Virus record (IMG/VR): IMGVR_UViG_3300028666_000022
Location: 124,001 to 188,000 of that record
DNA: 64,000 bases
Direction: 5' to 3' (one strand)
Part shown: one piece after another, positions 4,017 to 64,000 of the stretch
Layout: each line of letters begins with the position of its first letter
Numbering within the stretch: position 1 is the first letter of the stretch
Notes under the pieces: generated by a model
Databases searched by the model: none
The model's input: only the letters and a program-made list of their open reading frames with translations
What the model was told of the DNA's origin: nothing
Translations under genes and position numbers: made by a program

Positions 4017-4041
4017 TTCATTTATATTTTATATAATATTT

Positions 4042-5271: not shown

Positions 5272-5273
5272 AA

Positions 5274-7451: not shown

Positions 7452-7467
7452 TTAATTAATATTTTAT

Positions 7468-7476
7468 TATAAATAC
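7468..7476 (-). promoter_or_regulatory. Putative late promoter GTATTTATA
   Basis: 16 nt upstream of the ATG at 7451. Confidence 0.6.
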
Positions 7477-7505
7477 AAAAAAATATTTTTTAATTATTCA
7501 TATAA

Positions 7506-9479: not shown

Positions 9480-9481
9480 TT

Positions 9482-10399
9482 TTAAAAAATTATATTTTGA
9501 AAATTATTTTCAGTTTCTTTAATTTCTTTCACATAATTATATGAACAATATTCTTTACTACATTTCAATTCTTTATTAAATGGTGATATTTGATGCTGTG
9601 TTTTTAGAAAATAATACCCATTATTTATAACTGCACCTGCATTATGATAAATATTTGTATTTTCCCATTTTTTTATCACGTCTGTTGCCCAACAAAAATC
9701 AAGTTTTTTCATAATTTTTGTTTTATGACCAAAATACCAAGCATTCCATAAAACAGCCCACATATCTGCAGTCCATGCTTGAATTGGATGTTCTGGATTA
9801 TATTTGTGTGATGAATTAACCATAAATACATATAAGTTTTCTGAATCTTTTTCAACTTTTCTCCAAAAATCAGCATTTATGTTTTTCATTAAATATTGTG
9901 CACCACCTGCATTTTCATCATTTTCCTCAACAAGATTTGAATTAATTCCAACAATTTCACACATTTTATGAAATAATTCTTCACTTTTACTTTTAATATA
10001 TTGACTACTAATATATGATCTAGTATCACTTAAATACCATGTATTACTTTTTTCTAAATCTGCAAATTTCATTTTTTTAGTAAAAATTACATCTGGATCA
10101 ATATAAAAAAATATTTCATTTTCTGCATTTGGATATTTTTCAAAAAATTTAGCCAAAATGTGTGGTCTTAATGTTGATGAATATTGTGGATTAATTCTCT
10201 CATCATTAAAAATATAAAAACTACATTTACTATTAGTTTTTGTCATTATATTTGTCAACACACTACTTTTTTGTATTGAATTTTTACCTATAACATAAAT
10301 AACATCTTCATCTAGTCCAAGTTTTTTAAAATTGTTTATTTGGACAAGCATTTGCCATAAAAAATAATTACTGTCAGGTAATGCAATTAAAAATTTCAT
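9482..10399 (-). CDS. GT-A glycosyltransferase resembling peptidyl-Ser galactosyltransferase / Hyp arabinosyltransferase (GT96/GT95-like)
   Basis: NYFLWQ N-terminal motif, DPD (DxD), WTADMWA, IYHN; motif order resembles plant SERGT1/HPAT as recalled. Confidence 0.6.
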   Translation of the reverse strand: MKFLIALPDSNYFLWQMLVQINNFKKLGLDEDVIYVIGKNSIQKSSVLTNIMTKTNSKCSFYIFNDERINPQYSSTLRPHILAKFFEKYPNAENEIFFYIDPDVIFTKKMKFADLEKSNTWYLSDTRSYISSQYIKSKSEELFHKMCEIVGINSNLVEENDENAGGAQYLMKNINADFWRKVEKDSENLYVFMVNSSHKYNPEHPIQAWTADMWAVLWNAWYFGHKTKIMKKLDFCWATDVIKKWENTNIYHNAGAVINNGYYFLKTQHQISPFNKELKCSKEYCSYNYVKEIKETENNFQNIIF

Positions 10400-29100: not shown

Positions 29101-30486
29101 TTAAACTTCCACTAATTTATTAACAACAACATTTTTATAAAACTCAGCACGTTTTTGTGTAACATTGGCTAAATTATGTGATTCTTTGAAATCTTCATAC
29201 AACTGTTCACCTAATTTTTTTCTAAGATCTGCATCTAAAATAAGTTTTTTGAGGTATTTAATCCAATACTTCTTAGGATTTTTTTCTTTTTCTGCAGGAA
29301 TCAGAATACAGTTTTCCATATGTCTACCATGAACCGAATATGGGATCATATTTGTGCAAACGATTGGTAATTTTCTTGTCCAAACTTCTGCTTGCTTTAA
29401 ATTCGATTTCATGGAGTTGAAGAAATTTTTATCGAGCGGAGCGATAACAATATCACACTCATCTAATATTGTTGCATAAATATTTGCTTTTTGTGTCCAA
29501 CGTCTACCATAATTACCCTCATTTTCATATTTTACACCTCTTTCAAAATTCATTAACCATTGTAAATAATCTTTATTTTTTATCATTCTATGGTTATCTG
29601 TTAATATTTTCTCATATTGAAAATAAACACTTTCTTCTGATCTAATGTCTCTTTGGCTAGTACTAAATACTTTACCTCTATATTTATCTTTCAATTCCAT
29701 TGATATTGGTAACATATCAACATTACCTCTAGTTTTATTGATTATTTTAACCAAATCTGGTGTCCATAATCCTTTTTTCTGAAGTTCAGCACCAAACTCT
29801 TGATTGAATGTTACTTCGGTTGTATTTCCATCACAATCCCACCCTCCAAGAATAAGTGAAAATTTATCTTTAATATCAGGATCATTTGATAATACATTCA
29901 TTACTCCTTCAAGTTGTTGTAAATCACCTAAATGTGAAGATCCACCTTGATAACAGATTCTTACTTTACCATCAGGATCTGGTTTCCAATTATTTTGGAA
30001 TTGTTTCATCCAAGTTGGATCTACTGCGTTAAAAAATACACCAACATTATCTTTTCCAGTTACTTTCCTAATTTCATCTGCAAAAGCATCTGTTGTTGTT
30101 GTAACATAATCAGCTATCTTAAGATTTTCAATAATATTTAAATGCATTTTATTTTCTACACTTAAAGAATAAAATGGATGATTCTTATGTAATAACCAAT
30201 AATCATCAATATCAACAATTAATACCACACCAGCTTTTCTTAATTCATTTGCTAATTGAACCATTTGTTTAGTATCTTGCAATATTTGACGATGATAATG
30301 TATAATATTAAATGATTTTAAATAATCCAATGTATTAGGATCGTTAAAATCTATTTGTTGATTAAATTCAACATAAAAATCATCTGAATGATCACGTTCT
30401 AATTGTATTGCGGGAGATTGTGAACGAAAATATGATACCCCAGCCCCGTCTAAAGTGTAGAATAATATTCTAATTTTTTCTTTCAT
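29101..30486 (-). CDS. GT-B glycosyltransferase (GT4-like phage type)
   Basis: GVSYFR..P; VDIDDYW; ADYVTTTT; GGSSH..D; DIVIAPL..N.FN.MKSNLK..E. Confidence 0.8.
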   Translation of the reverse strand: MKEKIRILFYTLDGAGVSYFRSQSPAIQLERDHSDDFYVEFNQQIDFNDPNTLDYLKSFNIIHYHRQILQDTKQMVQLANELRKAGVVLIVDIDDYWLLHKNHPFYSLSVENKMHLNIIENLKIADYVTTTTDAFADEIRKVTGKDNVGVFFNAVDPTWMKQFQNNWKPDPDGKVRICYQGGSSHLGDLQQLEGVMNVLSNDPDIKDKFSLILGGWDCDGNTTEVTFNQEFGAELQKKGLWTPDLVKIINKTRGNVDMLPISMELKDKYRGKVFSTSQRDIRSEESVYFQYEKILTDNHRMIKNKDYLQWLMNFERGVKYENEGNYGRRWTQKANIYATILDECDIVIAPLDKNFFNSMKSNLKQAEVWTRKLPIVCTNMIPYSVHGRHMENCILIPAEKEKNPKKYWIKYLKKLILDADLRKKLGEQLYEDFKESHNLANVTQKRAEFYKNVVVNKLVEV

Positions 30487-32092: not shown

Positions 32093-34144
32093 TTAATATT
32101 TAAATATTAAAGGTACTTGAATATCATTAATACTTGTATTACCAACCATCCAACCTAAATTTGGATTATTAAAAAATACTGATTGTAATGAATTATATGT
32201 TACCGGTAAATTTAATGTTTGTCTGGTCCAATTTTGACCACCATCATTAGTGTTCAATATGATAAAATTATTAGTATTATCATAACCAACAGCCCAACCA
32301 TTATGTTTATCAGTAAAATTAACTGATGATAAGTATCCATCTAATGAAATCAAATTCTGTATCCAATTATTACCACCATCTACTGTTTTAAAAATAAGAA
32401 TATTTCCATTATCATTAGTACCAACAATCCAACCAATGTTTTCATTAATAAAACTACATGATTGTAAATTGCCATCAATTAATGGTAAGGTTTGTTGAAT
32501 CCAATTATTACCACCATCTACTGTTTTTATTACAACTATTTTACTATCAGAAAAACCAACAGCCCATCCAATATTAGAATTTATAAATTGTAATGAATAT
32601 AATGTATTTCCAGTAACTGGTATTGTTTGTTCAATCCAATTTTGACCACCATCAGTTGTTTTCAACATAATGTTACTACCATTATTTTTATTTCCTACTG
32701 TCCAACCAACATTTCCATCGATAAACTGTATTGAAAATAATAAACCTGTTGTTGTTGGTGTTGTTTGTTCTATCCAATTTTGACCACCATCAGTTGTTTT
32801 TAATATTATACAATTAATATTTGCAACATTACTATAACCAACAGCCCATCCAACATTAGAATCAAGAAAAAATAATGATGTTAATATAATTGGATTAATT
32901 GGTGAATTTTGACGATTCCAACTTTCTCCACCATCTATTGTTTTTAATATTGTTGCATTGTTATTATAATCTGAACCAACTGTCCAACCAATATTATTAT
33001 TAATAAATTTAATACAATTTAATACTCCACTTATTTTTGGCTGAGAAGGTAATAACCAATTATTTCCTCCATTAATTGTATTCATTAATAATGTTTCATT
33101 TGTTGTTAAATTTTCACCACCAATCCAAACATTATTATTGTTTACTGGAAACACTTGTTTTAAATTAGAAGTAGTTATCGGTGAAGTTTCTTGTATCCAA
33201 TTTTGACCACCATTTGTTGTTTTCAATATTAAACCACCATTACCAACAATCCATCCATTATTAATATCAATAAATTTTATTGAATTTAAAATACCAATAC
33301 TTATCGGTGAAGTTTCTTGTATCCAATTTTGACCACCATTTGTTGTTTTTAAAATTATTGCATTATTACTGTTATTTTCTCCAACAGCCCAACCATTATT
33401 TAAATCAATAAAATAAATTGAGTTTAATGTACCACCACTAACTAGTAATGTTTGTTTTATCCAATTTTGACCACCATCTGTTGTTTTTAATATTAATTCA
33501 TTATTACTTTTATCTTTACCAACTGCCCAACCTACTGTAGAACTAATAAATCGTACTGAATTTAATGTACCAACAGTTGATGGTATTGTTTGTTGTTGCC
33601 AACTTATTCCACTATCGGTGCTATTATAAATAATTCCGTTTCCAAGATTATCAACCCCAACACTCCAGCCATTATCACCATCAATGAAATAAACCGAATT
33701 TAATGTTGTGTTAGTTAGTGATTGTGACACTGAATTCCAACCACTAACACTTCCATCATTAGTATATAATATAATTGCTTCATTATTTATGTTTTTTCCA
33801 ACAGCCCAACCATTATTAATATCAATAAATTGTATTGAATTTAATGTAGCTGCAATAGAAATTGATGATAATGTATGTATCCAATTTTGTCCACCATCTA
33901 TTGTTTTCATTAATATTATGAAACCTGATGAATCATTACCAACTAACCAACCATTATTTTCATCAATAAAATTGATTGAATTAATTATTCCATTTATTGT
34001 TGGTAGATTTTTTTGAACCCAATTCTTTTTCAACAATTCGTTTTCTGTTTTTGTTGTATTTTTAGTTGTAATGATGTTTTTTGTTACTACACCATTTTCT
34101 GTAATAACAATATTTTTTGTTATTGTCGTGCTTTTTTCTATCAT
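32093..34144 (-). CDS. YCF48/BNR (Asp-box) repeat beta-propeller protein, about 14 blades
   Basis: Repeated LNSI.F.D.N.GW.VG....ILKTTDGGQNW. Confidence 0.85.
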   Translation of the reverse strand: MIEKSTTITKNIVITENGVVTKNIITTKNTTKTENELLKKNWVQKNLPTINGIINSINFIDENNGWLVGNDSSGFIILMKTIDGGQNWIHTLSSISIAATLNSIQFIDINNGWAVGKNINNEAIILYTNDGSVSGWNSVSQSLTNTTLNSVYFIDGDNGWSVGVDNLGNGIIYNSTDSGISWQQQTIPSTVGTLNSVRFISSTVGWAVGKDKSNNELILKTTDGGQNWIKQTLLVSGGTLNSIYFIDLNNGWAVGENNSNNAIILKTTNGGQNWIQETSPISIGILNSIKFIDINNGWIVGNGGLILKTTNGGQNWIQETSPITTSNLKQVFPVNNNNVWIGGENLTTNETLLMNTINGGNNWLLPSQPKISGVLNCIKFINNNIGWTVGSDYNNNATILKTIDGGESWNRQNSPINPIILTSLFFLDSNVGWAVGYSNVANINCIILKTTDGGQNWIEQTTPTTTGLLFSIQFIDGNVGWTVGNKNNGSNIMLKTTDGGQNWIEQTIPVTGNTLYSLQFINSNIGWAVGFSDSKIVVIKTVDGGNNWIQQTLPLIDGNLQSCSFINENIGWIVGTNDNGNILIFKTVDGGNNWIQNLISLDGYLSSVNFTDKHNGWAVGYDNTNNFIILNTNDGGQNWTRQTLNLPVTYNSLQSVFFNNPNLGWMVGNTSINDIQVPLIFKY

Positions 34145-53358: not shown

Positions 53359-53754
53359 TTAAATCACGCTTGTTTTTGTAATACTATCAGAAATAATTAT
53401 ATTGATAGTATCGTCAATTGGAAGAGTTAATTTAAGGTTACAAGAATCATTATTTAAAAAATCAATTTTAAATTCACCTTGAAATCTACCTGTTTTACGA
53501 GTTTGATGTAATTTAAATTTATAGACAAGAGTATATGAAAATTCGATTAGGTTTTGTGGTCTTAATTTTTCTATTTTTAATTCTGCTGGTACATTTGCAA
53601 TTCTAAATAAACCACTATCTGCATCAATCATTGAGAACGTAACTGCAACATCATCAAACATATTAGCAGTGATATTATATTGTTCTAATATTTTCTGAAT
53701 AAGAGGATATTGTAGTTCAGGAAAATTACTATCTTTTTTTATAAAAAAATTCAT
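53359..53754 (-). CDS. BppU N-terminal-like baseplate/fibre adaptor protein
   Basis: FFIKK....P.L...VTFSM...Y.F....T...G.F.GEF.I.F. Confidence 0.55.
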   Translation of the reverse strand: MNFFIKKDSNFPELQYPLIQKILEQYNITANMFDDVAVTFSMIDADSGLFRIANVPAELKIEKLRPQNLIEFSYTLVYKFKLHQTRKTGRFQGEFKIDFLNNDSCNLKLTLPIDDTINIIISDSITKTSVI

Positions 53755-53768
53755 TTAAACTAGTTTAA

Positions 53769-53777
53769 TATAAATAC
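53769..53777 (-). promoter_or_regulatory. Putative late promoter GTATTTATA
   Basis: 14 nt upstream of the ATG at 53754. Confidence 0.6.
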
Positions 53778-53881
53778 TAAAAAAATATTATGAAAATAAT
53801 CATACCTTCAATAATTACATATAGTATAATTAATATTATAAACAATGTTTTAATTTTTATTTTTTCGAATAACATTAGATT

Positions 53882-54132: not shown

Positions 54133-55023
54133 TTATAATTCAGTAGAACAAAAAACACCAGTATTTGTAATAGTCATTCTCCATCTACAACCATTTGGTG
54201 ATTTTAATATTACACCACTACCCAAATTATTAATTTCAACATCACTACACCAAGAAATTAATTTTGGAACTATAATAGTATCCGTATAAGTATTTCCTGT
54301 TACAACTATGTTATTTCCTCCAATAATCCCCGAATTTGTATTACCAGAATAAAGAACATTATTATTTCCACCAATAACCAGAGCATTGTTTGATGATACA
54401 ACATTACCATAACCAAGAGCAAATGAAAAATCAGATTCTGCTTCACCATTATTTGCAGCCATTGAATATTGGCCTAATGCAATACCACCTGTCATTGCAA
54501 CTGAACAATTACCTCCTGCATATCCAGCACTCATTGCAACAGAATAATCACCATTAGTAACACCACCAGCCATTGCTACTGAATTATTACCACAAGAATA
54601 AGAATTATAACCAATTGCAACTGAATTATTACCGCAAGCTTGACCACATGATGTTGCAACTGAATAACAACCAAACGTACAACCTCCAGCCATTCCAACT
54701 GAATTACATGAACAAGCAAAACCAGTTGCCATTCCAACTGAATTATCACATATTGCTTGACCAGAAGCCATCGCTACTGAATAATTACCATTAACATTAC
54801 CTCCAGCCATTGCAACTGAATTACAACCAGCAGCAGTACTACCAATATTAAATTTTAAATTATCATTATTTGAGTAATATACTAAACCCGTATTACCTGT
54901 TAATGTACCATTATTATTAAATATAATTTCAGTATCAGTAGATTTAATATTTGTTTTACCTGTTATTACAACAGATTCAATACCGTCATTATCTTTTAAA
55001 GATATATTTTGAATTATTATCAT
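54133..55023 (-). CDS. Fibre/adhesin protein with YadA-head-like repeats
   Basis: NSVAM.GG...G repeats; C-terminal GVILKSPNGCRW. Confidence 0.75.
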   Translation of the reverse strand: MIIIQNISLKDNDGIESVVITGKTNIKSTDTEIIFNNNGTLTGNTGLVYYSNNDNLKFNIGSTAAGCNSVAMAGGNVNGNYSVAMASGQAICDNSVGMATGFACSCNSVGMAGGCTFGCYSVATSCGQACGNNSVAIGYNSYSCGNNSVAMAGGVTNGDYSVAMSAGYAGGNCSVAMTGGIALGQYSMAANNGEAESDFSFALGYGNVVSSNNALVIGGNNNVLYSGNTNSGIIGGNNIVVTGNTYTDTIIVPKLISWCSDVEINNLGSGVILKSPNGCRWRMTITNTGVFCSTEL

Positions 55024-55062
55024 TTGTTTAATTTTAATTATATTGTTTTCTTGTGAATAATA

Positions 55063-57150
55063 TTATATTAATGTCGTACTTAACACTCCAATATCACTTA
55101 CGGTTATCTTATACCTACATCCACTTGTTGATCTTAATATTACACCACATAAATTTGTTGTCACCTCAATATTTTTATTCCAAACAATTAAATTAGGAAC
55201 TGCAACAGTATTACAATATGCATTAATTGACATAGTATAACCACTTCCACCAATAATTACTGAATTTATATTACCTGAACAAAGTAAATTATCGTGCCCC
55301 CCAATAATAACACCATTAATTGATTTAGTAACATTTCCAATTCCAACACTAAACGAACAATCACCACATGTAGTACTACCATTTATTGCAACAGAGCCAA
55401 CACCACATGCAATACCACATGTCATTGCCACTGAATTAGTACCAATTGCAGTACTATTTAAAGTAATACCCATTGAATTTTGACCACAAGCATTACCACC
55501 AGCCATTGCAACAGAATTTTGACCAAACGTATTACCACCAGCCATTGCAACAGAATTAGTACCACATGCTAACCCTCCAGCCATTGCTACTGAAGACATT
55601 GCGTGTGTTTCACCATTAACCATTGCAACAGATTGCATATACATTGCTTGACCACCAACCATTGCAACAGAATAATCACCACAAGCAACACCACCAGCCA
55701 TTGCTATTGAGTTACACGCATAAGTTAAACTATTAACACCAATTGCAATTGAACCATCACCAGAAACAGTAATACCACCTCCCATTGCAATTGAATTTTG
55801 ACTACATGCAATTGAATTACTACCTAAAGCAAACGTATTACTACCCATAGTAATACCACCAATAATAGCAACTGAAGTATTACCCGATGTAATACTACCA
55901 TAACCCATAGCAAATGAATTAATATCACAAGTAGTCCCACCAATCATTGCTACAGAATTAAAAGAATTTGCTATACTAACACCCATAGCAACTGAATATT
56001 GACCGTAAGCACAACTTAAACCCATAGCTACTGAATTATCACCAAAAGCTTGACCACCATTCATTGCTACAGAACTAATACCACACGCTATCGAAAAACT
56101 AGTATTATTAATATCAAAACCAACAGCAAATGAATTAATTCCATATGCTTGGCCACTACCCATTGCTATTGAACCTTGACCCTGTGCACAACTACCAGAA
56201 TTTACTTGTAAAGCATCGATACTTTTACAATATTTTAAATTAGTATTACCAGTCAATGTTCCACTATTATTAAATATAATCTCAGTATTACTCGAACAAA
56301 TGCTAGTACCTCCTGAACTACCTGAAGTTAATTCTATTTTTTTTGTTAATGGATTACGACATAATACATTACCACTACCTGCTTCAACATTCCAAATTGC
56401 TAAATTAGGAACAATAACAGTATTTAAATATGTGTTTCCGGTAGCATTAATATTATTACCACCAATAATACCTGAAGTAGTATTACCAGATGAAATAACA
56501 TTATTACAACCACCAATAATTACACTATTTTTTGAACGAACAATATTATTAAATCCAATTGCAATTGAATTACAATTACATGTCATACCATTAATCATAG
56601 CAACAGAACAAATACCACAAGCAGTACCACCAATCATTGCTAATGAATTACAACAACAAGTAGTTGCGTTACCCATCGCAATTGAACATACACCATAAGT
56701 GAGACTATCTATTGCAGCAAACGAATAAATGCCATACGATCCAGCACTACCAATCATTGCAACTGAATTACATCCATTTGATGAAGCACCTGCAATACCC
56801 ACCGAATGTTGGGCAAAAGCGCAACTTCCTAAACCTATTTGTAACCCATCAATACTTGAACAATATAATAAATTTGTATTACCCGTAATTACATTATTTT
56901 TATTAAAAATTATTTCATTATTTGTTGAACAAATACTACTACCCCCTGAACTATTTTGTAAAGTAATGTTACCATTAGAATCTGATGTAGCTATTTTACC
57001 TGAACCATGATTAGGTAAGATTGATAATGTTCCACCACTCATTATTTTTAATTGTCCAATAATTAAAGTGCATCCAGATAAATTTAAAACATCAGTTGAA
57101 CACTGTCCAAATTTATTATTATTTAAATATAATTTAGTATTTACACTCAT
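55063..57150 (-). CDS. Fibre/adhesin protein with two YadA-head-like repeat modules, Cys-rich
   Basis: Two EIIFN...TGNT-(SVAM)n-IIGG.NN modules; C-terminal GVILRSTSGCRY. Confidence 0.75.
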   Translation of the reverse strand: MSVNTKLYLNNNKFGQCSTDVLNLSGCTLIIGQLKIMSGGTLSILPNHGSGKIATSDSNGNITLQNSSGGSSICSTNNEIIFNKNNVITGNTNLLYCSSIDGLQIGLGSCAFAQHSVGIAGASSNGCNSVAMIGSAGSYGIYSFAAIDSLTYGVCSIAMGNATTCCCNSLAMIGGTACGICSVAMINGMTCNCNSIAIGFNNIVRSKNSVIIGGCNNVISSGNTTSGIIGGNNINATGNTYLNTVIVPNLAIWNVEAGSGNVLCRNPLTKKIELTSGSSGGTSICSSNTEIIFNNSGTLTGNTNLKYCKSIDALQVNSGSCAQGQGSIAMGSGQAYGINSFAVGFDINNTSFSIACGISSVAMNGGQAFGDNSVAMGLSCAYGQYSVAMGVSIANSFNSVAMIGGTTCDINSFAMGYGSITSGNTSVAIIGGITMGSNTFALGSNSIACSQNSIAMGGGITVSGDGSIAIGVNSLTYACNSIAMAGGVACGDYSVAMVGGQAMYMQSVAMVNGETHAMSSVAMAGGLACGTNSVAMAGGNTFGQNSVAMAGGNACGQNSMGITLNSTAIGTNSVAMTCGIACGVGSVAINGSTTCGDCSFSVGIGNVTKSINGVIIGGHDNLLCSGNINSVIIGGSGYTMSINAYCNTVAVPNLIVWNKNIEVTTNLCGVILRSTSGCRYKITVSDIGVLSTTLI

Positions 57151-57219
57151 AAAACATTTGTTTTAAATATTACTTTTATAATTTTTTATAAAAAACTCAT
57201 TACTAAGTAATTATTTTAA

Positions 57220-57228
57220 TATAAATAC
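57220..57228 (-). promoter_or_regulatory. Putative late promoter GTATTTATA
   Basis: Upstream of 57150. Confidence 0.5.
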
Positions 57229-57323
57229 TAAAAAAATCGTAGTTGATCAATTATTATAAAAATAAAACCACTTAAAATTAATTAACTGGTTCTACAAAAA
57301 ATAAATATATGACGAAAAGAAAA

Positions 57324-58232
57324 TTATTTTTGCCTATTTACTGCATCTATTATTTCATCTATGTTAAAAAGATTAACTGTGTCATAGGGAAATTGCTGTA
57401 TTTGTCCACTTATATCATCTGTTAAATATGTATATTTATCAAAATTATTTATAATATTTGCATTTGGTAATATATTAATATTTTCGGGGTAGCCAAAAAC
57501 TGATGGTGAATTACCAATCCAACATACTGTACTTTGTAAACCTAAACCAGCAGCCACGTGCATGGCGAAAGAATCAATAAATAACCTTTTTGTACTCAAT
57601 CCAAATACTCCATATAATTCTCTTAGTGGTAAATTTAATAATTCAGTACCTTGTAATGCTGGTTGTTCTGGAGTTCGTATATGTAAAATGCGATATGTTT
57701 TACTAAAATAATTTACTAATTGTTGAGCTATTTCTATTGGCATATCTCTATACCAAGATTTTTTAGAATATTGCGAACCATTACCAGCACCTCCGTTACT
57801 TTGTAGTAATAAAATAGGTCTTCCATCTGGTTTTATTTTGTCTTTTGCTATTTCTAATTCACGTGGATTAATATAAATATCTGGTTTATATCCATCATAT
57901 TTAACATTAAATAATTTACACCATGTTTCAGTAAGATGTTCTTTTCTTAGAATATGATTAGTTTCATTATATGGATCATGTTTCATTATTATGGTATCTT
58001 CTTTCAAAAAATCTTTCATATATCTACCTTCACCATGTAAATAAAAACGAAATACATTAGGATTATAAAAAAACGGAGCATCCCAGCTACAAATCACTAC
58101 AACATGATAATCTAAATATTGTTTTTTTATTGCTCTAATAACGGCTGTGGACATGCAATTCTTACCCTGACCACCAGCTACTTCTAGTATTATATACTTA
58201 TTTGAATCTTTTATTCTGTTATCAACTATCAT
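57324..58232 (-). CDS. GT9-like (heptosyltransferase-fold) glycosyltransferase
   Basis: GG.GK...STAVIRAIKKQY; LLQSNGG; IDSFAMHVAAGL. Confidence 0.75.
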   Translation of the reverse strand: MIVDNRIKDSNKYIILEVAGGQGKNCMSTAVIRAIKKQYLDYHVVVICSWDAPFFYNPNVFRFYLHGEGRYMKDFLKEDTIIMKHDPYNETNHILRKEHLTETWCKLFNVKYDGYKPDIYINPRELEIAKDKIKPDGRPILLLQSNGGAGNGSQYSKKSWYRDMPIEIAQQLVNYFSKTYRILHIRTPEQPALQGTELLNLPLRELYGVFGLSTKRLFIDSFAMHVAAGLGLQSTVCWIGNSPSVFGYPENINILPNANIINNFDKYTYLTDDISGQIQQFPYDTVNLFNIDEIIDAVNRQK

Positions 58233-58237
58233 AAAAT

Positions 58238-59194
58238 TTAATTTTTAATATTATTATTTACATCATCTTTATATTTCCAAATATAACCTCCTGCAGTTTT
58301 TGCTCTACTTCTTAAACAATTAGATATTAAACCGCAAGATAAGTTATTGATTCTTTCTGCTTCAGCAATAGATAAATATTCACCTAAATAAACATTATTT
58401 ATCGTATATTTACATATTGCTCTTATATAATATTTTTCTTCATGTTCATATTTTTCAATATTTTCGGGTATTTCATTCTTATAATACCAATAAAAATTAC
58501 CTGCTTGTTTTCTTTTTTTGTTTAAACATTTATTTATATTTGGTTGAGGAATATCTATTATTTTAGATGCCTCCTCTTGACTTTTAAATTCTCTAATAAA
58601 TTCACCATTTAATGAATATTGAACTATCGGTATATTACTTTTACGTGTTTCCTTAAATTTAAATGAATTTGCTTTTTCTTTAGAAAAGAAAAAATACATA
58701 TTTTTGTATGAATTTCTTCGTTTTTGATCTATTACTCTTGATATTGCAGGTATATTAGTATCATAAAAATCAGCAACTTCTGTAATTGATGTAAATTCTT
58801 TTAAATATTCACCAGTTTCTGAATATTGAAAAACTCTTTTTTTTGAGGAATTTCTACAACCTCCATCACCTCCATTAGTCAAATTAGTTAAGTTAACACC
58901 TTGATCTTTATATTTTTTAATGTAGAAAATTTCTAATAATTCATGTTCATATTTATTATTTTCTTTGTTAAAAACATAATTACACTCATCAATAATTTTC
59001 ATTTCAGGCTTTAATCCAGAAACAAGTATTTTATTTATAATATTATTTTTATGTGGATTTTTTTCTCTTTTTTTACCATATACATTAATATGTTGATTAT
59101 ACCTTCTTTTTAAATTTTCAGTAAAACCCACATAAAAAACCTCATTATTTCTAGGATCGACTAAAGTATAAATATAAACTTTCTTATCTGACAT
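58238..59194 (-). CDS. GIY-YIG homing endonuclease with three NUMOD1-like repeats
   Basis: YIYTL.DPR...FYVG; LTNLTNGGDG; (Q/K)Y...G..I.EF.S..EA repeats. Confidence 0.85.
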   Translation of the reverse strand: MSDKKVYIYTLVDPRNNEVFYVGFTENLKRRYNQHINVYGKKREKNPHKNNIINKILVSGLKPEMKIIDECNYVFNKENNKYEHELLEIFYIKKYKDQGVNLTNLTNGGDGGCRNSSKKRVFQYSETGEYLKEFTSITEVADFYDTNIPAISRVIDQKRRNSYKNMYFFFSKEKANSFKFKETRKSNIPIVQYSLNGEFIREFKSQEEASKIIDIPQPNINKCLNKKRKQAGNFYWYYKNEIPENIEKYEHEEKYYIRAICKYTINNVYLGEYLSIAEAERINNLSCGLISNCLRSRAKTAGGYIWKYKDDVNNNIKN

Positions 59195-59214
59195 TATAAT
59201 TTTTTATATTTTTT

Positions 59215-59223
59215 TATAAATAC
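59215..59223 (-). promoter_or_regulatory. Putative late promoter GTATTTATA
   Basis: 20 nt upstream of the ATG at 59194. Confidence 0.55.
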
Positions 59224-59306
59224 TATAAAAAACGACAAAATCACAATAAATATGAAAAAAATTTAAAATATTTTCATTAAAAAGATAAGGATAGAGTATT
59301 TAAATT

Positions 59307-59822
59307 TTAATTAACTACACCTAAATTTACCCAAGAGCTAATACTAGTACTATAAGTAAATTCAAGTTCACCATAGTTGGTATTAATTAAGGCACAAGAA
59401 GATCCATCAATGCAAACATTACCGCAGATTTTAATATTATTAACTAAAGCACAACCAGAAACATCTTTAATTCTATATGCCTGACCATTAGCTGGTGTAC
59501 TAGGAAGAGTAATTGTACGAGAAGCTGAAGGAGAATTTACAAGAACAATATATTGTTTAGGTGTTAAAGTAACATTGGTGGTTACAGCACTAATATTATA
59601 AGCAACACCCTTAACAACTAAAGCACCATCAGTAATATCTGAACCATACCAAAATTCAACATTGTTAATATTTACAGTAAGACCAACATATCTCAATGAT
59701 TGAGGTATTGAAGTATTAACAGCAGTAATACCAGTATATGGTTGGTTTGAAGAATTTAAATATTTACTATCAATTGGGTTTCCAACATTTATTTTCAAGT
59801 TATCATTTAAGGTAATTGACAT
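59307..59822 (-). CDS. Short fibre-like structural protein (paralog of 60924-62393)
   Basis: Shared N-terminal LNDNL.IN.G.P.DSKYLN and C-terminal LPS.P..GQ...D.SGCALV.NI. Confidence 0.7.
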   Translation of the reverse strand: MSITLNDNLKINVGNPIDSKYLNSSNQPYTGITAVNTSIPQSLRYVGLTVNINNVEFWYGSDITDGALVVKGVAYNISAVTTNVTLTPKQYIVLVNSPSASRTITLPSTPANGQAYRIKDVSGCALVNNIKICGNVCIDGSSCALINTNYGELEFTYSTSISSWVNLGVVN

Positions 59823-59898
59823 GATATATTATGTATTATAGATATTATCTTATTTTTAATATTATTTAATTACTATTATTTTATAAATTTTCATATTT

Positions 59899-60900
59899 TT
59901 AACTTAATGCCATTGCTGAAATCGATGCAGTTTGTTTATTTGAAATATAAACTTTATAACTACAACCACACCAACATGCAGTAGTAGCACTAATTGTATC
60001 TGGTGCAGGAAATAAATTACAAGCAGGACTTACACCACCACCAATAGTACCATTATTTAGTGCATTAACACACCAACAAACTTTTGTTGTAGTTGTTGCT
60101 GGAACTGCAAACCATAGATAATCATTACTTCCACTATTAAAATTAATACTAATAGAACTAGAACTACTAGCCAATACTTTAGTTCCACCAATAACCATAG
60201 CACATGTAGCAGTAGGTCTATTTGCACCAGCAGCACCCGGACAAGTACAAACACCATAATAATATGGTAATAAACCAGTTACAGTATAAGTACTCGAACC
60301 AAATTGAGTATTACAACTATTTTTAGCACTACCACACCAAATTTGATTATCACCACAAAAACTAAATCCTCTAGTAGTTATTGTTGCAGATTCTGGTGAT
60401 GTTACTGGACAATTTGTAGCTAATATAGAACTAGTTGTAACATCAACAATACATAAAGTATTTGCAGCTACATTACTTGTATTAGTAAATCCAAATGTAA
60501 ATGATTTTGAACCACTAATAATTGTACCAACTTCTATTGGTGTACTAACATTAGTACTAAAGCTACTAAATGCAGGTAATAAATACGGTACTAATATTTC
60601 TTTAAGTAATTCATTAGTACTTTTACCAGTTAAAACAGTACCAGCGGTAATTCCACCAACAGTTGCTGTAGCGGGTGAACTTAAATTATATATTGTTTGA
60701 CCAGTTACAGTAACAATTTTACTATCAACATATTGTTTATCAATTATTTGAGTATTTCCCGTGAATGTTGGATGTACTGCATATTTTAAAATTCCTGTTG
60801 ACGCAATTATAGTATTTCCAGACAAATTTACTGTTTGACCAGTACTTTGATATACTTTATCATTATTAATATTTATCTTAGTGTTAAATGTGATTGCCAT
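59899..60900 (-). CDS. Fibre-like structural protein (paralog of 62422-64000)
   Basis: Shared YNL.SPAT.TVGGIT.GT.LTGK and DY.WFAVP...LNNG.IGG. Confidence 0.7.
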   Translation of the reverse strand: MAITFNTKININNDKVYQSTGQTVNLSGNTIIASTGILKYAVHPTFTGNTQIIDKQYVDSKIVTVTGQTIYNLSSPATATVGGITAGTVLTGKSTNELLKEILVPYLLPAFSSFSTNVSTPIEVGTIISGSKSFTFGFTNTSNVAANTLCIVDVTTSSILATNCPVTSPESATITTRGFSFCGDNQIWCGSAKNSCNTQFGSSTYTVTGLLPYYYGVCTCPGAAGANRPTATCAMVIGGTKVLASSSSSISINFNSGSNDYLWFAVPATTTTKVCWCVNALNNGTIGGGVSPACNLFPAPDTISATTACWCGCSYKVYISNKQTASISAMALS

Positions 60901-60923
60901 AATATTAAATTTATTATTTTTAC

Positions 60924-62393
60924 TTAATTAATAAATGCTATTGCACTCCAAAAATTACCATTATTTATAACTGAAATTGATCCATAATTAGTATTGATCG
61001 GAAAACATGTATTACCATTAATACATTTCCCATTTCCATTAATAATTATATTATGCACTAATGCACAACCACTAATATCAGAAACACTAATTTTTTGACC
61101 AAGTTTAGGTACTGAAGGTAAATAAATTGTTGACCCACTTTGAGCACCAATATAATTATTATTTGTTGATGCAGTATATGAAATAGATCCAATTAAACAT
61201 ACATCAACAACATTTGATTTAGTTTTACTATATCCTGTTACATAATTTACGTCTACAAGTGAATATGTACTAAAATTTGTACTGTAATCATTACCATATT
61301 TTAAATTATATTTTGATACACCACCATCAAAAATAGTATTTCCTGTTAATATTCCACCTAAACTAATATTTTTTCCTGTTTTATTTAAACCATTTGTAGC
61401 ACCTGTTATATATTTTAATTCAATAGTACCAATTCTAGTATTAGTATTACCAGTATATGTTGTAAATGATGTTTTATCTAATTTTGTACCTAATACTGTA
61501 TTTAATGTACCACCACTAATATTTACATTTAATTGTGTGCCATTCCAAGTTAATGAATTACCTGCAATAGTGCCATTCACAGATACTGTATGTGTTCCAT
61601 TTAATAATGTTACTGTAATACCTGTCCCACTAATTATATTAGGAATTTTATTAAATAATACAAAATTTAATGAACTAACTCCAATAGTTATTGGATCTGG
61701 TGTTGTTAATACCCATGCAGTATTACCATTAGTATTTCCAGTAAATATCCACATATAACTACCTGATAAAACACCACTAATAAAATCGCTTGCACGATTC
61801 CATGTACTCGCTGATGCTATATATACACCATTATTTACACTACTTATTTGATCTTTAACTAAAACTCTATCACCATTAATTACAGTAATTCCATCAATAG
61901 TAATTAAACCAGTTAACGCTATATTTCCTGTTGTTGCTACTCTAACTTCCATTTTCGGTTTTAATCCAATAGCAATTGTATCAACATATTCTTTATCAAC
62001 TAAAGATCGATTAACATAATTTCCAGATAAATCATTTGTATATTGAATTCCCTTAAAATTTGTATCTCCACTAATACTAAATGTTTTATTATTGACATTA
62101 ATTAATGTATTTTTTATTAATGTGCCACCCAATTGAATACTTGTTCCTGATATATTTATACCATTTGTTGCATTAACTAACGATTTACTAATTAAATTAA
62201 TATCTGCAACACCATTTTTATACCAATATTCTATACCACCAATATTTACGGTTAAACCAGTATATCTATATGATATTGGAACACCCAAATTTACTGCAGA
62301 TGTAGATATCCAAGGCGTAGTAACATTTAAATATTTACTGTCAACTGGTTTACCAGTATTAATCGCTAAATTATCATTAAGTATTATTGACAT
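60924..62393 (-). CDS. Tail fibre-like protein
   Basis: VRVATTGNI.LTGL.TIDG....GDRVLVKDQ....NGVY domain; DKEYVD motif. Confidence 0.75.
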   Translation of the reverse strand: MSIILNDNLAINTGKPVDSKYLNVTTPWISTSAVNLGVPISYRYTGLTVNIGGIEYWYKNGVADINLISKSLVNATNGINISGTSIQLGGTLIKNTLINVNNKTFSISGDTNFKGIQYTNDLSGNYVNRSLVDKEYVDTIAIGLKPKMEVRVATTGNIALTGLITIDGITVINGDRVLVKDQISSVNNGVYIASASTWNRASDFISGVLSGSYMWIFTGNTNGNTAWVLTTPDPITIGVSSLNFVLFNKIPNIISGTGITVTLLNGTHTVSVNGTIAGNSLTWNGTQLNVNISGGTLNTVLGTKLDKTSFTTYTGNTNTRIGTIELKYITGATNGLNKTGKNISLGGILTGNTIFDGGVSKYNLKYGNDYSTNFSTYSLVDVNYVTGYSKTKSNVVDVCLIGSISYTASTNNNYIGAQSGSTIYLPSVPKLGQKISVSDISGCALVHNIIINGNGKCINGNTCFPINTNYGSISVINNGNFWSAIAFIN

Positions 62394-62421
62394 CTCTTTA
62401 TTTTATTTTCATATTTTTATT

Positions 62422-64000
62422 TTAGCTTACACACATTGGTACACCACATGCTGTTCCAGTTGTAGTACAACTAACATATACCATATAATTACAACCAGTC
62501 CAACAACCTTGTGCTGATGTTACAGCAACAATACAATCCGTTGCAAATAAATTCCCAATACCACCAATACAACCATTATTTAAACTACTAACATACCAAC
62601 AAGTTTTAACTGACGTACCATTTGGAACTGCAAACCATATATAATCACTTGGTGAACTGTTAAATATTATTGGTAGTGTACCACTAGCTGAAGCAATACA
62701 TTTATTTCCTGCAGCAATATCAGAACTACCAAGTACCTGTGATGTACATTTTCCCCAATACCAAGGCAATATACCAGAAATTGATGATGAAGCAAAACTT
62801 GTTGTTCCAGAAGACAATGGAGAACAATAATTACTACCACCACTTCCTTTTGGTTGAATACCAGAATTATATGTTGTATCTACTGACCATGTTTGACTTC
62901 CACCAGAAACAACATAATTATTAGCTGTTTTAACTACGCTTGAACCACTACAAACATATAAACCCGCTACTTGAGAGCCAGTAAAACAATATTTATTTGC
63001 AGTTCCACTTCTAAATGGAGAAGTACTACAATATTGTGGACTAATAGATCCTCTATTAAAACATCCAGTAATATTTAAACTAGATATTGAACATCCGATT
63101 TCAAATGTACCTGAAGGAGATAATAAAATTGATGTACTTGGTGCAGTTAATGTACCAAATAATTCTGGTGCTAAAATATCTTGAAATAATTGAAATACTG
63201 TTTTTCCTGTTAATGCAGTACCAATAGTAATTCCACCAACAGTACATGTTGCTGGTGAATTTAGATTATATTTTGCATCATGAACTACAATAGTATTACC
63301 TACTTGGGATAATGCAGTACTACCACTACCCAATAATGAATTAAATCGTAAACAATTGTTTACTTTAGAATCAAATAAACCAATACCAGTTCCAATATTA
63401 ACAGCATTTGTCGTACCTGACGTAGTACCAGTGCTTGTTTGTGTTGCGCCAGAAATAAAAACAAAATTATCATCATAAGAAACACGTATAAGATCATTTG
63501 TTTTTGACATTATGGTTCTTAAATGAAGTTGTTGATTTGTTTTATTTACATAAACTGGTCCACCAATATTATATGTTGTTCCAGTAGTTAAACTACCACT
63601 AACATTTAAAACAACATTACCACCATTATTATATGCTCCTGTTGACCATGTAATACCACTATACATTGCACCAACAGCAGGAAACGCATTTAGAAATGTA
63701 CCAACAGTTTTTGTTATGTCACCATCAACCAAAATCCAACCAACTTGATTTGTTAATCCAGTATAAGTATTATATATCCATGATTTAACTGGAGTTGGTA
63801 TTGTTCTAACATAACCTCTTCTTAATGGTCCATTATAAATTGGAGAACCAATCCTAATTATACCATTAATATCTCTATAATAATAATTATAAACCGAATC
63901 ATATTCACCATTGTAAGCAGGATTAATAGTATTTGATATTATTAATTTTTGTATTCCAGTGCTTCCACTAAAATATCCAACATTTGTTGCACCAGTAACT
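62422..64000 (-). CDS. Fibre-like structural protein, 5' end beyond the window
   Basis: Frame stays open from 63732 to 64000 (...VTGATNVGYFSG...). Confidence 0.75.
   Translation of the reverse strand, partial: VTGATNVGYFSGSTGIQKLIISNTINPAYNGEYDSVYNYYYRDINGIIRIGSPIYNGPLRRGYVRTIPTPVKSWIYNTYTGLTNQVGWILVDGDITKTVGTFLNAFPAVGAMYSGITWSTGAYNNGGNVVLNVSGSLTTGTTYNIGGPVYVNKTNQQLHLRTIMSKTNDLIRVSYDDNFVFISGATQTSTGTTSGTTNAVNIGTGIGLFDSKVNNCLRFNSLLGSGSTALSQVGNTIVVHDAKYNLNSPATCTVGGITIGTALTGKTVFQLFQDILAPELFGTLTAPSTSILLSPSGTFEIGCSISSLNITGCFNRGSISPQYCSTSPFRSGTANKYCFTGSQVAGLYVCSGSSVVKTANNYVVSGGSQTWSVDTTYNSGIQPKGSGGSNYCSPLSSGTTSFASSSISGILPWYWGKCTSQVLGSSDIAAGNKCIASASGTLPIIFNSSPSDYIWFAVPNGTSVKTCWYVSSLNNGCIGGIGNLFATDCIVAVTSAQGCWTGCNYMVYVSCTTTGTACGVPMCVS

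What the first reader, a model, noticed from the sequence alone, without database searches (positions are those of the whole stretch)
54133..64000. Second glycosyltransferase (GT9-like) embedded in a Cys-enriched fibre/adhesin cluster
Seen: 57324-58232 has GT9-fold motifs and lies directly upstream of two YadA-head-like fibre genes rich in Ser and Cys (NSVAM.GG.ACG); the fibres upstream are also Cys-enriched (ACWCGCSY, CWTGCNY). Established: bacterial autotransporter heptosyltransferases (TibC/Aah) glycosylate Ser in beta-solenoid adhesins. Inference: each structural module carries its own protein glycosyltransferase. With the late-motif GT-B gene (29101-30486) this gives three GTs, possibly priming plus elongating enzymes.
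Basis: partly seen in the sequence, partly recalled or inferred. Interest (0 to 1): 0.7.

Follow-up and report, generated by a model that had tools for sequence, protein, structure and literature searches.

The report
Phage glycosyltransferase wired to Cys-rich tail fibres
A jumbo phage carries a very divergent heptosyltransferase-like (GT9-fold) sugar-transferring enzyme, switched on with the virion genes and sitting inside its tail-fibre gene cluster; relatives of this enzyme in many other phages also sit right after cysteine-rich fibre genes, so it probably decorates the fibres with sugar, though no experiment shows this yet.

Summary
57324-58232(-) encodes a 302-aa protein with no Pfam hit, but its model matches only GT9 structures strongly (Z 18.5-24.1; next family 11.4) and its family profile aligns with E. 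coli WaaC/F/Q/U (97% probability). The GT9 donor motif is kept. The catalytic Asp of WaaC/TibC is replaced by a near-invariant Lys in a GGxGK loop, and TibC's N-terminal barrel and iron finger are absent, so it is not a TibC/Aah-type enzyme.

The two downstream genes are YadA-head-repeat fibres with 4.4-5.0% Cys, against 1.5% genome-wide. The window is part of a 340-kb phage from rhizosphere metagenomes.

New evidence:
- The enzyme gene has a late promoter motif shared with sheath, portal, terminase and baseplate genes. A GIY-YIG homing endonuclease is inserted between promoter and gene.
- The family is virus-only and sits in the fibre cassette in 58 related loci.
- In 9 of 23 more distant enzyme lineages it directly follows a large gene, Cys-rich in 8. 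Those tested are tail fibre or spike proteins, often followed by a sulfotransferase.
- The phage encodes its own nucleotide-sugar pathways.

Fibre glycosylation is the best reading (about 0.5) but unproven. Donor and acceptor are unknown.

The parts
62422..64000 (-). 3' part (C-terminal 526 codons) of a 796-aa fibre-module gene whose start lies beyond the window end (window coordinate about 64812). The C-terminal 436 aa have 4.1% Cys and are a paralogue of the 333-aa gene.
   Evidence: Genome ORF call. 35% identity over 288 aa to 59899-60900. Cys count. Homologues stand upstream of the GT in nearly all related loci.
60924..62393 (-). 489-aa virion fibre or decoration-type protein. Cys-poor (0.8%).
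   Evidence: PHROG tail fibre and virion structural families, E down to 8e-28. PDB capsid decoration protein 9nx3, E 5e-6. N- and C-termini are 52-54% identical to the 171-aa gene.
59899..60900 (-). 333-aa Cys-rich (4.2%), Ser/Thr-rich (26%) fibre-module protein, paralogue of the 62422.. gene.
   Evidence: No Pfam or PHROG hit.
59307..59822 (-). 171-aa short paralogue of the 489-aa protein, sharing both termini.
   Evidence: Weak PHROG baseplate and tail fibre hits.
59215..59225 (-). Late promoter motif TAGTATTTATA, 21 nt upstream of the GIY-YIG start. It drives the GIY-YIG + GT pair.
   Evidence: 7 matches in the window against 0.38 expected, all on the coding strand. The same motif stands before the sheath, portal, TerL and baseplate wedge genes. 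In 13 relatives without GIY-YIG it lies 34-62 nt upstream of the GT.
58238..59194 (-). GIY-YIG / NUMOD homing endonuclease (318 aa), inserted between the GT and its promoter.
   Evidence: Pfam GIY-YIG, NUMOD1 and I-HmuI NUMOD-like. Present in 21 of 58 related loci.
57324..58232 (-). 302-aa divergent GT9-fold (GT-B) glycosyltransferase of a phage-only family. It has a GGxGK loop (G20, G21, G23, K24) and the donor motif D220-S221-x3-H225-x-A-A.
57220..57230 (-). Late promoter motif TAGTATTTATA, 70 nt upstream of the 695-aa fibre gene.
55063..57150 (-). 695-aa tail-fibre-type protein. It has a conserved N-terminal anchor of about 60-90 aa, then two modules of 13-14-residue YadA-head-like repeats. 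5.0% Cys.
   Evidence: Pfam YadA_head 7.8e-11. PDB 1p9h E 1.1e-3. The N-terminus is 50-64% identical to the gene after the GT in most relatives, while the rest varies. Repeat analysis.
54133..55023 (-). 296-aa single-module paralogue of the 695-aa fibre, with YadA-head-like repeats and a small C-terminal beta domain. 4.4% Cys.
   Evidence: Pfam YadA_head 3.6e-7. 38-43% identity to three parts of the 695-aa protein. AF2 gives a regular beta-solenoid for residues 80-210, pLDDT 85-92. Only 3 homologues in 5.8 billion proteins.
53769..53779 (-). Late promoter motif before the conserved 131-aa gene (53359-53754) that closes the cassette, ahead of the SNF2 helicase.
   Evidence: The 131-aa gene and SNF2 follow the fibre cassette in relatives.

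Best explanation
57324-58232 encodes a late-expressed, phage-specific glycosyltransferase with the GT9 (heptosyltransferase) fold. It belongs functionally to the tail-fibre cassette.

Most likely mechanism (inferred): in the cytoplasm of the infected cell it transfers a sugar from a nucleotide sugar onto the Gly/Ser/Thr/Cys-rich beta-roll fibre proteins encoded beside it. It would act as a fibre-maturation enzyme, in the gene position where fibre chaperones usually sit. In other phages the sugar would then be extended, methylated or sulfated by fused or adjacent enzymes.

Shown: the fold, the retained donor-binding motif, the late promoter, the virus-only distribution, and the recurrent adjacency to fibre or spike genes.

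Not determined: the acceptor (fibre protein), the residue modified (Ser/Thr or Cys) and the donor sugar.

The chemistry probably differs from WaaC/TibC, because the catalytic Asp is replaced by a conserved Lys.
For: Fold and donor site:
- GT9 structures score Z 18.5-24.1 against 11.4 for the next family.
- hhalign to E. coli GT9 enzymes gives 97.3% probability. D220/S221/H225/A227/A228 align with WaaC D261/T262/H266/A269/A270. These residues are conserved in 74-76 of 77 family members.
- One remote member passes the PF01075 cut-off.

Timing: the motif TAGTATTTATA precedes the GIY-YIG/GT pair, the 695-aa fibre, and the tail sheath, portal, TerL and baseplate wedge genes. It lies directly upstream of the GT in 13 relatives lacking GIY-YIG.

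Distribution: the nearest ESM-Atlas clusters are 96-100% viral. HMMER finds 948 clusters at 50% identity.

Synteny:
- Among the 58 related loci analysed, the GT sits inside or at the end of the fibre cassette wherever enough flanking sequence is held. It stays 61-77% identical while the fibres are reshuffled.
- Among 23 evaluable more distant GT lineages, 9 have a same-strand gene of at least 300 aa immediately upstream, with gaps of mostly 22-60 nt.
- 8 of those 9 genes have at least 3.5% Cys. Their median is 5.4%, against 0.9% for other large ORFs of the same loci (p 1.8e-18; per-lineage p 2.4e-5).
- These neighbours are tail spike, tail fibre, central fibre J or virion structural proteins by PHROG.
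- They fall into at least 3 BLAST-unrelated groups.

Glycan-building context:
- The family is fused with GT25 and FkbM methyltransferase domains, and with GT1 and GT2 domains.
- An adjacent PAPS sulfotransferase is found in 10 lineages, including fibre-GT-sulfotransferase operons in L131 and L204.
- The phage has its own nucleotide-sugar cluster.

Charge: the N-domain has median net charge 0 across the family, against +8 for WaaC and +5 for WaaF. This weakly argues against an anionic lipid A/Kdo acceptor.

Precedent: phage-encoded GTs glycosylate mycobacteriophage capsids and tail tubes (Freeman 2023, as cited in PMC10877033).
Against: - No direct evidence exists that any fibre is modified.
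- The complex prediction of the GT with the 695-aa fibre (residues 1-300) gave no answer.
- The GT is conserved while its neighbouring fibres are hypervariable, so a conserved acceptor feature has not been identified.
- The canonical catalytic Asp is missing.
- In 14 of 23 distant lineages no large gene lies directly upstream. Some members sit among other GTs, ribonucleotide reductase or sulfotransferase genes.
- Several fibre neighbours are not Cys-rich: HTVC111P gp52 has 1.5% and L067 has 1.1%.
- Gene adjacency in related phages is partly inherited rather than independent.
- Late expression beside receptor-binding genes also fits an enzyme that alters the host receptor.
Confidence: 0.5

Rival explanations
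1. The enzyme modifies a host envelope glycan (LPS core, capsule or a lipid-linked intermediate) late in infection. This would, for example, destroy or mask the receptor so that progeny are not trapped on debris and superinfection is blocked. It would be encoded next to the receptor-binding genes as T5 llp is next to its receptor-binding protein gene.
For: - The closest solved and Swiss-Prot structures are mostly LPS heptosyltransferases.
- JGI names several homologues ADP-heptose:LPS heptosyltransferase.
- Fusions with GT25, an LPS/LOS family, exist.
- Partner enzymes (sulfo-, methyl- and carbamoyl-transferases) are typical of surface-glycan tailoring.
- Every identified host of a family member is Gram-negative: Pelagibacter, Vibrio, Synechococcus.
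Against: - The family is virus-only and is not close to any cellular GT9.
- The catalytic Asp used by WaaC is replaced.
- The N-domain is not consistently basic, unlike WaaC and WaaF.
- The GT is conserved while the receptor-binding fibres, and hence the receptors, vary.
- Tight coupling directly behind fibre genes, often with gaps of 22-60 nt or overlaps, is the usual position of fibre maturation factors.
- It occurs in small lytic phages that carry few accessory genes.
Confidence: 0.22
2. The protein has lost catalysis and serves as a fibre assembly chaperone or adaptor with a GT9 fold. The GT9-fold proteins BimC (inactive heptosyltransferase) and the chloroplast NDH subunit PnsB1 are non-enzymatic in this way.
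For: - The canonical catalytic Asp is replaced by Lys in 74 of 77 members.
- BimC and PnsB1 are among the structural matches.
- The gene sits in the position typical of fibre chaperones.
Against: - The nucleotide-sugar-binding motif (D220, S221, H225) and R162/D163 are conserved in 71-76 of 77 members across 27-78% sequence identity.
- Repeated fusion to active-type GT25, GT2, GT1 and methyltransferase domains, and pairing with sulfotransferases, points to a sugar-building enzyme.
Confidence: 0.1
3. The acceptor is something else: phage DNA, another virion protein such as the capsid or its decoration protein, or a small molecule.
For: - The 489-aa neighbour resembles a capsid decoration protein.
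- In some relatives the GT lies at the border with the SNF2 helicase module.
- Known phage virion glycosylation targets the capsid and tail tube (PMC10877033).
Against: - A late promoter shared with morphogenesis genes is an unlikely time for DNA modification.
- There is no recurrent link to DNA-metabolism genes. The recurrent neighbour is a fibre or spike gene.
Confidence: 0.1

Closest known systems
LPS heptosyltransferases WaaC/WaaF and the Veillonella GT9 structure 3tov (CAZy GT9, Pfam PF01075)
   Same: They share the GT-B fold with the highest structural scores (Z 20-24). A profile-profile match covers 226 columns. The C-terminal D-[ST]-x3-H-x-A-A donor motif is conserved.
   Different: - There is no PF01075 hit and only 9-17% identity.
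- The catalytic Asp13 position is Lys24, in a GGxGK loop.
- The N-domain is not basic.
- The family is found only in viruses.
- The protein is shorter, 302 aa against 319-348.
Autotransporter heptosyltransferases TibC/Aah (BAHT family; PMC4358343)
   Same: The catalytic domain has the GT9 fold (Z 20.2). The gene lies next to genes for repetitive beta-solenoid adhesin-like proteins, which in the BAHT case are the substrates.
   Different: - It lacks the N-terminal beta-barrel of TibC residues 1-97; the alignment starts at TibC residue 95.
- It lacks the four-Cys iron finger. The phage protein has only 4 scattered Cys, at positions 26, 48, 105 and 237.
- It lacks the catalytic Asp110 equivalent.
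- Its neighbours are YadA-head-type 13-14-residue repeats, not AIDA-type 19-residue repeats.
Virus-encoded virion glycosylation: mycobacteriophage capsid and tail-tube glycosylation (Freeman 2023 via PMC10877033) and giant-virus autonomous glycosylation (PMC4691112)
   Same: The virus encodes its own GTs and, here, its own nucleotide-sugar enzymes. Multi-domain fusions of GT with GT or methyltransferase occur in the family.
   Different: It is a different GT family, and the proposed target is the tail fibres. Nothing has been demonstrated biochemically.
YadA head (left-handed parallel beta-roll) of trimeric autotransporter adhesins, Pfam PF05658, PDB 1p9h
   Same: The NSVA[IM]G-type repeats of 13-14 residues give Pfam hits above the cut-off and a sequence match to 1p9h.
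   Different: - There is no autotransporter anchor, stalk or signal peptide.
- The repeats are embedded in a phage fibre with a conserved N-terminal anchor.
- Cys is strongly enriched at repeat position -4 relative to the Ser of NSVAM.
- The monomer model gave no significant fold match.

Membership tests
CAZy GT9 / Pfam Glyco_transf_9 (PF01075) | GT-B fold closest to solved GT9 enzymes | tested here: met
   Z is 24.1 (3tov), 21.6 (WaaF) and 20.2 (WaaC, TibC). The next family scores 11.4. Foldseek E is 1e-12 to 1e-7.
CAZy GT9 / Pfam Glyco_transf_9 (PF01075) | Sequence match to the family model above its cut-off | tested here: not met
   There is no PF01075 hit for the protein or anywhere in the genome at E<=10. 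Homology shows only by profile-profile comparison (97.3%) and through a remote member, P0225, at 22.9 bits against a cut-off of 22.
CAZy GT9 / Pfam Glyco_transf_9 (PF01075) | C-terminal nucleotide-sugar motif (WaaC D261, T262, H266, A269, A270) | tested here: met
   D220, S221, H225, A227 and A228 align with it. D220, S221 and H225 are conserved in 73-76 of 77 members.
CAZy GT9 / Pfam Glyco_transf_9 (PF01075) | N-terminal catalytic Asp (WaaC D13, TibC D110) | tested here: not met
   It aligns with K24. Lys is present in 74 of 77 family members, and no conserved acidic residue lies in that loop.
CAZy GT9 / Pfam Glyco_transf_9 (PF01075) | ADP-heptose as donor | not testable with these tools
   No GmhA-type (SIS_2) or NTP_transferase gene was found in the phage. 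The host supply is unknown.
Bacterial autotransporter heptosyltransferases (TibC/Aah) | N-terminal beta-barrel domain (TibC 1-97; PMC4358343) | tested here: not met
   The structural alignment begins at TibC residue 95 and at model residue 10. The protein is 302 aa, while Swiss-Prot lists TibC at 406 aa.
Bacterial autotransporter heptosyltransferases (TibC/Aah) | Iron finger of four conserved Cys (TibC C339, C342, C358, C370) | tested here: not met
   The phage protein has 4 Cys, at positions 26, 48, 105 and 237 (read from the sequence). None is conserved across the family.
Bacterial autotransporter heptosyltransferases (TibC/Aah) | Beta-hairpin thumb and dodecamer assembly | not tested
   The oligomeric state was not modelled. 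No insertion of that size fits in a 302-aa chain, but this was not examined residue by residue.
Bacterial autotransporter heptosyltransferases (TibC/Aah) | Glycosylates the repetitive beta-helical protein encoded beside it | tested here: inconclusive
   Adjacency is met and recurrent. The complex prediction gave no answer. There is no biochemical evidence.
YadA_head repeat proteins (PF05658), for 55063-57150 and 54133-55023 | Repeat match above the Pfam cut-off and the repeat period | tested here: met
   Scores are 42.5 and 30.8 bits against a cut-off of 25. The period is 13-14 residues. 1p9h matches at E 1.1e-3.
YadA_head repeat proteins (PF05658), for 55063-57150 and 54133-55023 | Trimeric left-handed beta-roll | tested here: inconclusive
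   The monomer AF2 model shows a regular solenoid (pLDDT 85-92 for residues 80-210). No PDB match has E<=0.001. A trimer was not modelled.
Trimeric autotransporter adhesins (YadA family proper) | C-terminal membrane anchor and full-length YadA model | tested here: not met
   The NCBIfam YadA_autotrans model scores 14 bits against a cut-off of 750. There is no anchor domain hit. The context is a phage fibre cassette.
GIY-YIG homing endonuclease, for 58238-59194 | GIY-YIG catalytic domain with NUMOD DNA-binding modules, and sporadic presence | tested here: met
   Pfam GIY-YIG, NUMOD1 and I-HmuI NUMOD-like hit. It is present in 21 of 58 related loci, always between the promoter and the GT.

The most novel reading that the evidence does not exclude
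This would be a large, virus-only family of fibre-maturation glycosyltransferases, derived from the GT9 fold but with a re-tooled active site (GGxGK Lys in place of the catalytic Asp). The enzymes would glycosylate Cys/Ser-rich beta-roll tail fibres, possibly on the Cys ladder itself (S-glycosylation). The sugar would be further sulfated, methylated or extended in many phages. Glycan-coated tail fibres would then be a widespread, unrecognised feature of environmental phages.
Probability: 0.3. Interest if true: 0.8.

Novelty: new variant of a known kind. Interest (0 to 1): 0.6.

Why it matters
Tail fibres decide which hosts a phage can infect. A sugar coat on them, made by the phage's own enzymes, would alter receptor binding, stability and recognition by defences or grazers. 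It would also be invisible to sequence-based host-range prediction.

The full-text searches made here found no description of this family or of its link to fibres. The only phage virion glycosylation met in those searches concerns mycobacteriophage capsids and tail tubes (PMC10877033).

This work defines a testable enzyme-substrate pair: the GT with the 695-aa or 296-aa fibre. It gives a diagnostic motif, GGxGKN..ATAV, which found a family member in 118 of 119 matched loci. It also gives a family-wide genomic signature: fibre or spike gene, then GT, then often a sulfotransferase.

The Asp-to-Lys change raises a mechanistic question for GT-B enzymes.

Tried and rejected
- Pfam, NCBIfam and PHROG scans of the GT gave nothing.
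- A narrow family profile found no PDB sequence match.
- PF01075 found nothing in the genome.
- A paralogue search found no second copy of the GT. The 305-aa GT at 9482-10399 is unrelated.
- The complex prediction of the GT with fibre residues 1-300 returned 'no answer'. It is evidence neither for nor against.
- The fold search with the 296-aa fibre model gave only weak generic beta-helix matches.
An IUPAC pattern scan replaced them.
- No close DNA relative exists among cultured phages. The SNF2 helicase is at most 28% identical to any isolate, so the host stays unknown.
- An early look at four distant homologues suggested no link between the GT and Cys-rich neighbours. The larger survey reversed this.
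- Sequencing runs that hold the locus are DNA from rhizosphere metagenomes only, so expression could not be checked.
- Literature searches found no description of this family or of GT-fibre-sulfotransferase modules.
- Freeman 2023 could not be read directly.

Full report
**Setting.** The window is bases 124001-188000 of a 339,898-bp virus record with direct terminal repeats. GC content is 25%. All genes in the region lie on the minus strand. Identical DNA is held by rhizosphere metagenome runs. No cultured phage is close: megablast finds nothing, and the SNF2 helicase is at most 28% identical to any isolate. The host is therefore unknown.

**Gene order.** In transcription order the region reads as follows.
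- A 796-aa gene ends at 62422. It starts beyond the window end, so the '436-aa' ORF is a truncation.
- 60924-62393 encodes a 489-aa protein.
- 59899-60900 encodes a 333-aa protein.
- 59307-59822 encodes a 171-aa protein.
- 58238-59194 encodes a GIY-YIG/NUMOD endonuclease.
- 57324-58232 encodes the 302-aa glycosyltransferase (GT).
- 55063-57150 encodes a 695-aa protein.
- 54133-55023 encodes a 296-aa protein.
- A conserved 131-aa gene and an SNF2 helicase follow.

The fibre genes form paralogue pairs: 796/333, 489/171 and 695/296.

**The enzyme: fold.** No Pfam, NCBIfam or PHROG model hits the 302-aa protein, and PF01075 finds nothing in the genome. An AF2 model built on 32 homologues has pLDDT 82.7. 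Foldseek ranks GT9 structures first: 3tov, WaaF, TibC and WaaC, with E from 1e-12 to 1e-7. Swiss-Prot models give LPS heptosyltransferases first, then BimC, TibC and Aah. VIA-align gives Z 18.5-24.1 for all GT9-fold entries and 11.4 for the next family. A 77-sequence family profile aligns with E. coli WaaC/WaaF/WaaQ/WaaU at 97.3% probability, E 2e-11, over 226 columns.

**The enzyme: active site.** In that alignment the donor motif is kept. D220, S221, H225, A227 and A228 match WaaC D261, T262, H266, A269 and A270. WaaC G12-D13, however, aligns with G23-K24. Lys24 is present in 74 of 77 family members, inside a GGxGK loop. Other near-invariant residues are T29, H99 (62 of 77), W104, P117, W160, R162 and D163. 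WaaC D13 and TibC D110 are the proposed catalytic bases (PMC4358343). The protein also lacks TibC's N-terminal beta-barrel, since the alignment starts at TibC residue 95. It lacks the four-Cys iron finger too. It therefore has the GT9 fold and donor site but is not a canonical GT9 enzyme or a BAHT enzyme.

**The family.** The word-indexed search finds 430 homologues. The best 120 are 65-78% identical and sit on contigs of up to 363 kb. Exhaustive HMMER finds 948 clusters at 50% identity. The nearest ESM-Atlas clusters are 96-100% viral. Some carry PF01075, and some are GT9+GT1 or GT2+GT9 fusions. BFVD gives similar results. Other fusions carry GT25 or FkbM methyltransferase domains. A DNA pattern for GGxGKN[IV]xATAV retrieved 119 new IMG/VR loci, of which 118 hold a family member.

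**Expression.** The motif TAGTATTTATA, usually after a T-run, occurs 7 times in the window against 0.38 expected, always on the coding strand. It occurs 20 times in the genome, in 15 cases 4-70 nt upstream of a start codon. Genes behind it include the tail sheath, portal, large terminase and a baseplate wedge subunit. It also precedes the 695-aa fibre, the 131-aa gene and the GIY-YIG/GT pair. In 13 relatives without GIY-YIG the motif lies 34-62 nt before the GT. GIY-YIG is present in 21 of 58 loci, always between motif and GT. So the GT is a late gene, and the endonuclease is a mobile insertion.

**The fibres.** The 695-aa and 296-aa proteins pass the Pfam YadA_head cut-off. The 695-aa protein also matches the YadA head structure 1p9h. 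The repeats have period 13-14 with consensus G-[GS]-x-[AT]-C-G-x-N-S-V-A-M. Cys is most frequent at position -4 relative to the Ser (35% of repeats). The AF2 monomer of the 296-aa protein is a regular solenoid but has no significant PDB fold match.

Cys content is 5.0%, 4.4%, 4.2% and 4.1% in four of the six fibre proteins, against 1.5% genome-wide. The 489-aa protein has 0.8%. Only the N-terminal 60-90 residues of the 695-aa protein are conserved in the gene after the GT in relatives, at 50-64% identity. The bodies are replaced, as is usual for modular fibres. The 296-aa protein has just three homologues among 5.8 billion proteins.

**Synteny in the clade.** Among the 58 related viral loci analysed, the GT sits within or at the end of the fibre cassette wherever enough flanking sequence is held. 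Homologues of the 796/333 and 489/171 modules lie upstream. Downstream lie mostly Cys-rich proteins (3-7.7% Cys), followed by the 131-aa gene and SNF2. Fibres with 32-38 YadA-like repeats lie directly upstream of the GT in several loci (L009, L039, L060 and others).

**Synteny outside the clade.** In Pelagibacter phage HTVC111P the homologue (gp53) starts at the stop of gp52, a tail spike by PHROG at E 3.5e-114. The 103 complete GTs from the pattern scan form 26 clusters at 55% identity.
- In 9 of 23 evaluable clusters the gene directly upstream is on the same strand and at least 300 aa long.
- In 8 of those 9 it has at least 3.5% Cys.
- Upstream neighbours have median Cys 5.4% (n=39), against 0.9% for other ORFs of at least 300 aa in the same loci (n=241). 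Mann-Whitney p is 1.8e-18, and 2.4e-5 using one value per cluster.
- By PHROG, those neighbours with a hit (5 of 9 tested) are tail spike, tail fibre, central fibre J or virion structural proteins.
- By BLAST they fall into at least three unrelated groups.
- The largest group has 15-residue Gly-rich repeats with scattered Cys.
- In ten GT clusters the next gene is a PAPS sulfotransferase, including fibre-GT-sulfotransferase operons.

Counter-examples exist. Some members lie among other GTs or near ribonucleotide reductase. Some fibre neighbours are not Cys-rich.

**Glycan capacity of this phage.** Outside the window, at genome 206-226 kb, lies a cluster holding:
- GDP-mannose 4,6-dehydratase;
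- a DegT-like aminotransferase;
- short-chain dehydrogenases;
- a FabH-like enzyme;
- WcbI;
- a GT2;
- a trio of Polysacc_synt_2, an RmlD-like reductase and UDP-GlcNAc 2-epimerase.

Reading the trio as a UDP-L-FucNAc-type pathway is my inference. No GmhA-type or NTP-transferase gene was found.

Inside the window, 9482-10399 is a GT-A protein. Its structural neighbours carry HPAT (hydroxyproline O-arabinosyltransferase), PqqD+HPAT and O-FucT fusions. It stands directly upstream of a still more Cys-rich gene set with 7-9% Cys. 29101-30486 is a phage-type GT1/GT4-like enzyme.

**Interpretation.** The best-supported reading is a late, phage-specific glycosyltransferase that matures the fibres by glycosylating them. 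It uses a GT9-type donor site and a changed acceptor-side chemistry. I put this at about 0.5.

The rivals are modification of a host surface glycan (0.22), a non-catalytic chaperone with a GT fold (0.1), and another acceptor (0.1). The family's N-domain is not consistently basic, with median net charge 0 against +8 for WaaC and +5 for WaaF. This argues weakly against an inner-core LPS acceptor. The complex prediction gave no answer. Donor, acceptor residue and any role of the Cys remain open.

**Comparison and novelty.** It works like, but is not a member of, the TibC/Aah system. Its fold places it with GT9, but one defining residue and the family model are not met. The only phage virion glycosylation met in the literature searches concerns mycobacteriophage capsids and tail tubes (PMC10877033). 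Giant viruses glycosylate autonomously (PMC4691112). No paper in the library describes this family or its link to fibres. I rate it a new variant of a known kind.

Noticed in passing
window 3225-10399 (- strand): This is a second, more extreme Cys-rich gene set: 657, 409 and 263-aa proteins with 7-9% Cys. The 657-aa protein (7506-9479) ends in a run of about 17 Ser-Cys dipeptides. The set is directly preceded by a 305-aa GT-A protein (9482-10399) whose structural neighbours carry HPAT, PqqD+HPAT and O-FucT domains.
   Followed up: partly
genome G000:C1 206001-226000 (locus L078), outside the window: The phage encodes a nucleotide-sugar and glycan cluster: GDP-mannose 4,6-dehydratase, a DegT-like aminotransferase, SDRs, a FabH-like enzyme, WcbI, a GT2, an RmlD-like reductase, a Polysacc_synt_2 dehydratase and UDP-GlcNAc 2-epimerase. 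There are three GT2 genes in the genome.
   Followed up: partly
window 2377, 20871, 39788, 44310, 53769, 57220, 59215 (- strand): A conserved late promoter-like motif, TAGTATTTATA after a T-run, occurs 20 times in the genome. It stands before the sheath, portal, terminase, baseplate wedge and fibre genes. A variant, CTGTATTTATA, precedes the GT1/GT4-like gene at 30486.
   Followed up: yes
window 58238-59194: A GIY-YIG/NUMOD homing endonuclease is inserted between the GT and its late promoter. It is present in 21 of 58 related loci at exactly this spot, which suggests a homing site at the 5' end of the GT gene.
   Followed up: partly
loci L112, L131, L204 and others (IMG/VR contigs): In ten lineages of the GT family the adjacent gene of about 270 aa is a PAPS-type sulfotransferase (PF13469/PF00685). 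In L131 and L204 the order is Cys-rich fibre, GT, sulfotransferase, with overlapping or near-touching genes. This phage has no homologue of it.
   Followed up: partly
window 62422-64000: The ORF listed as 436 aa with a TTG start at 63732 is really the C-terminal part of a 796-aa ORF starting at window coordinate about 64812. The fibre cassette continues beyond the window with a further 324-aa Ser/Thr- and Cys-rich gene.
   Followed up: yes
window 32093-34144: A 683-aa protein has eight BNR/YCF48-like repeats (PSII_BNR, E 1e-54). It is a beta-propeller of the sialidase-like kind, lying between large structural-size genes.
   Followed up: no
genome G000:C1 311216-314704 (L081): The 1162-aa portal-like protein also matches an HNH endonuclease family in its middle (residues 482-679). 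This may be an inserted mobile element or an intein-like insertion.
   Followed up: no
L005 (Pelagibacter phage HTVC111P) 2225-8864: In this small pelagiphage a HlyC-type lysine acyltransferase precedes the tail genes and the GT homologue follows the tail spike. Two protein-modifying-type enzymes thus flank the host-recognition genes.
   Followed up: no
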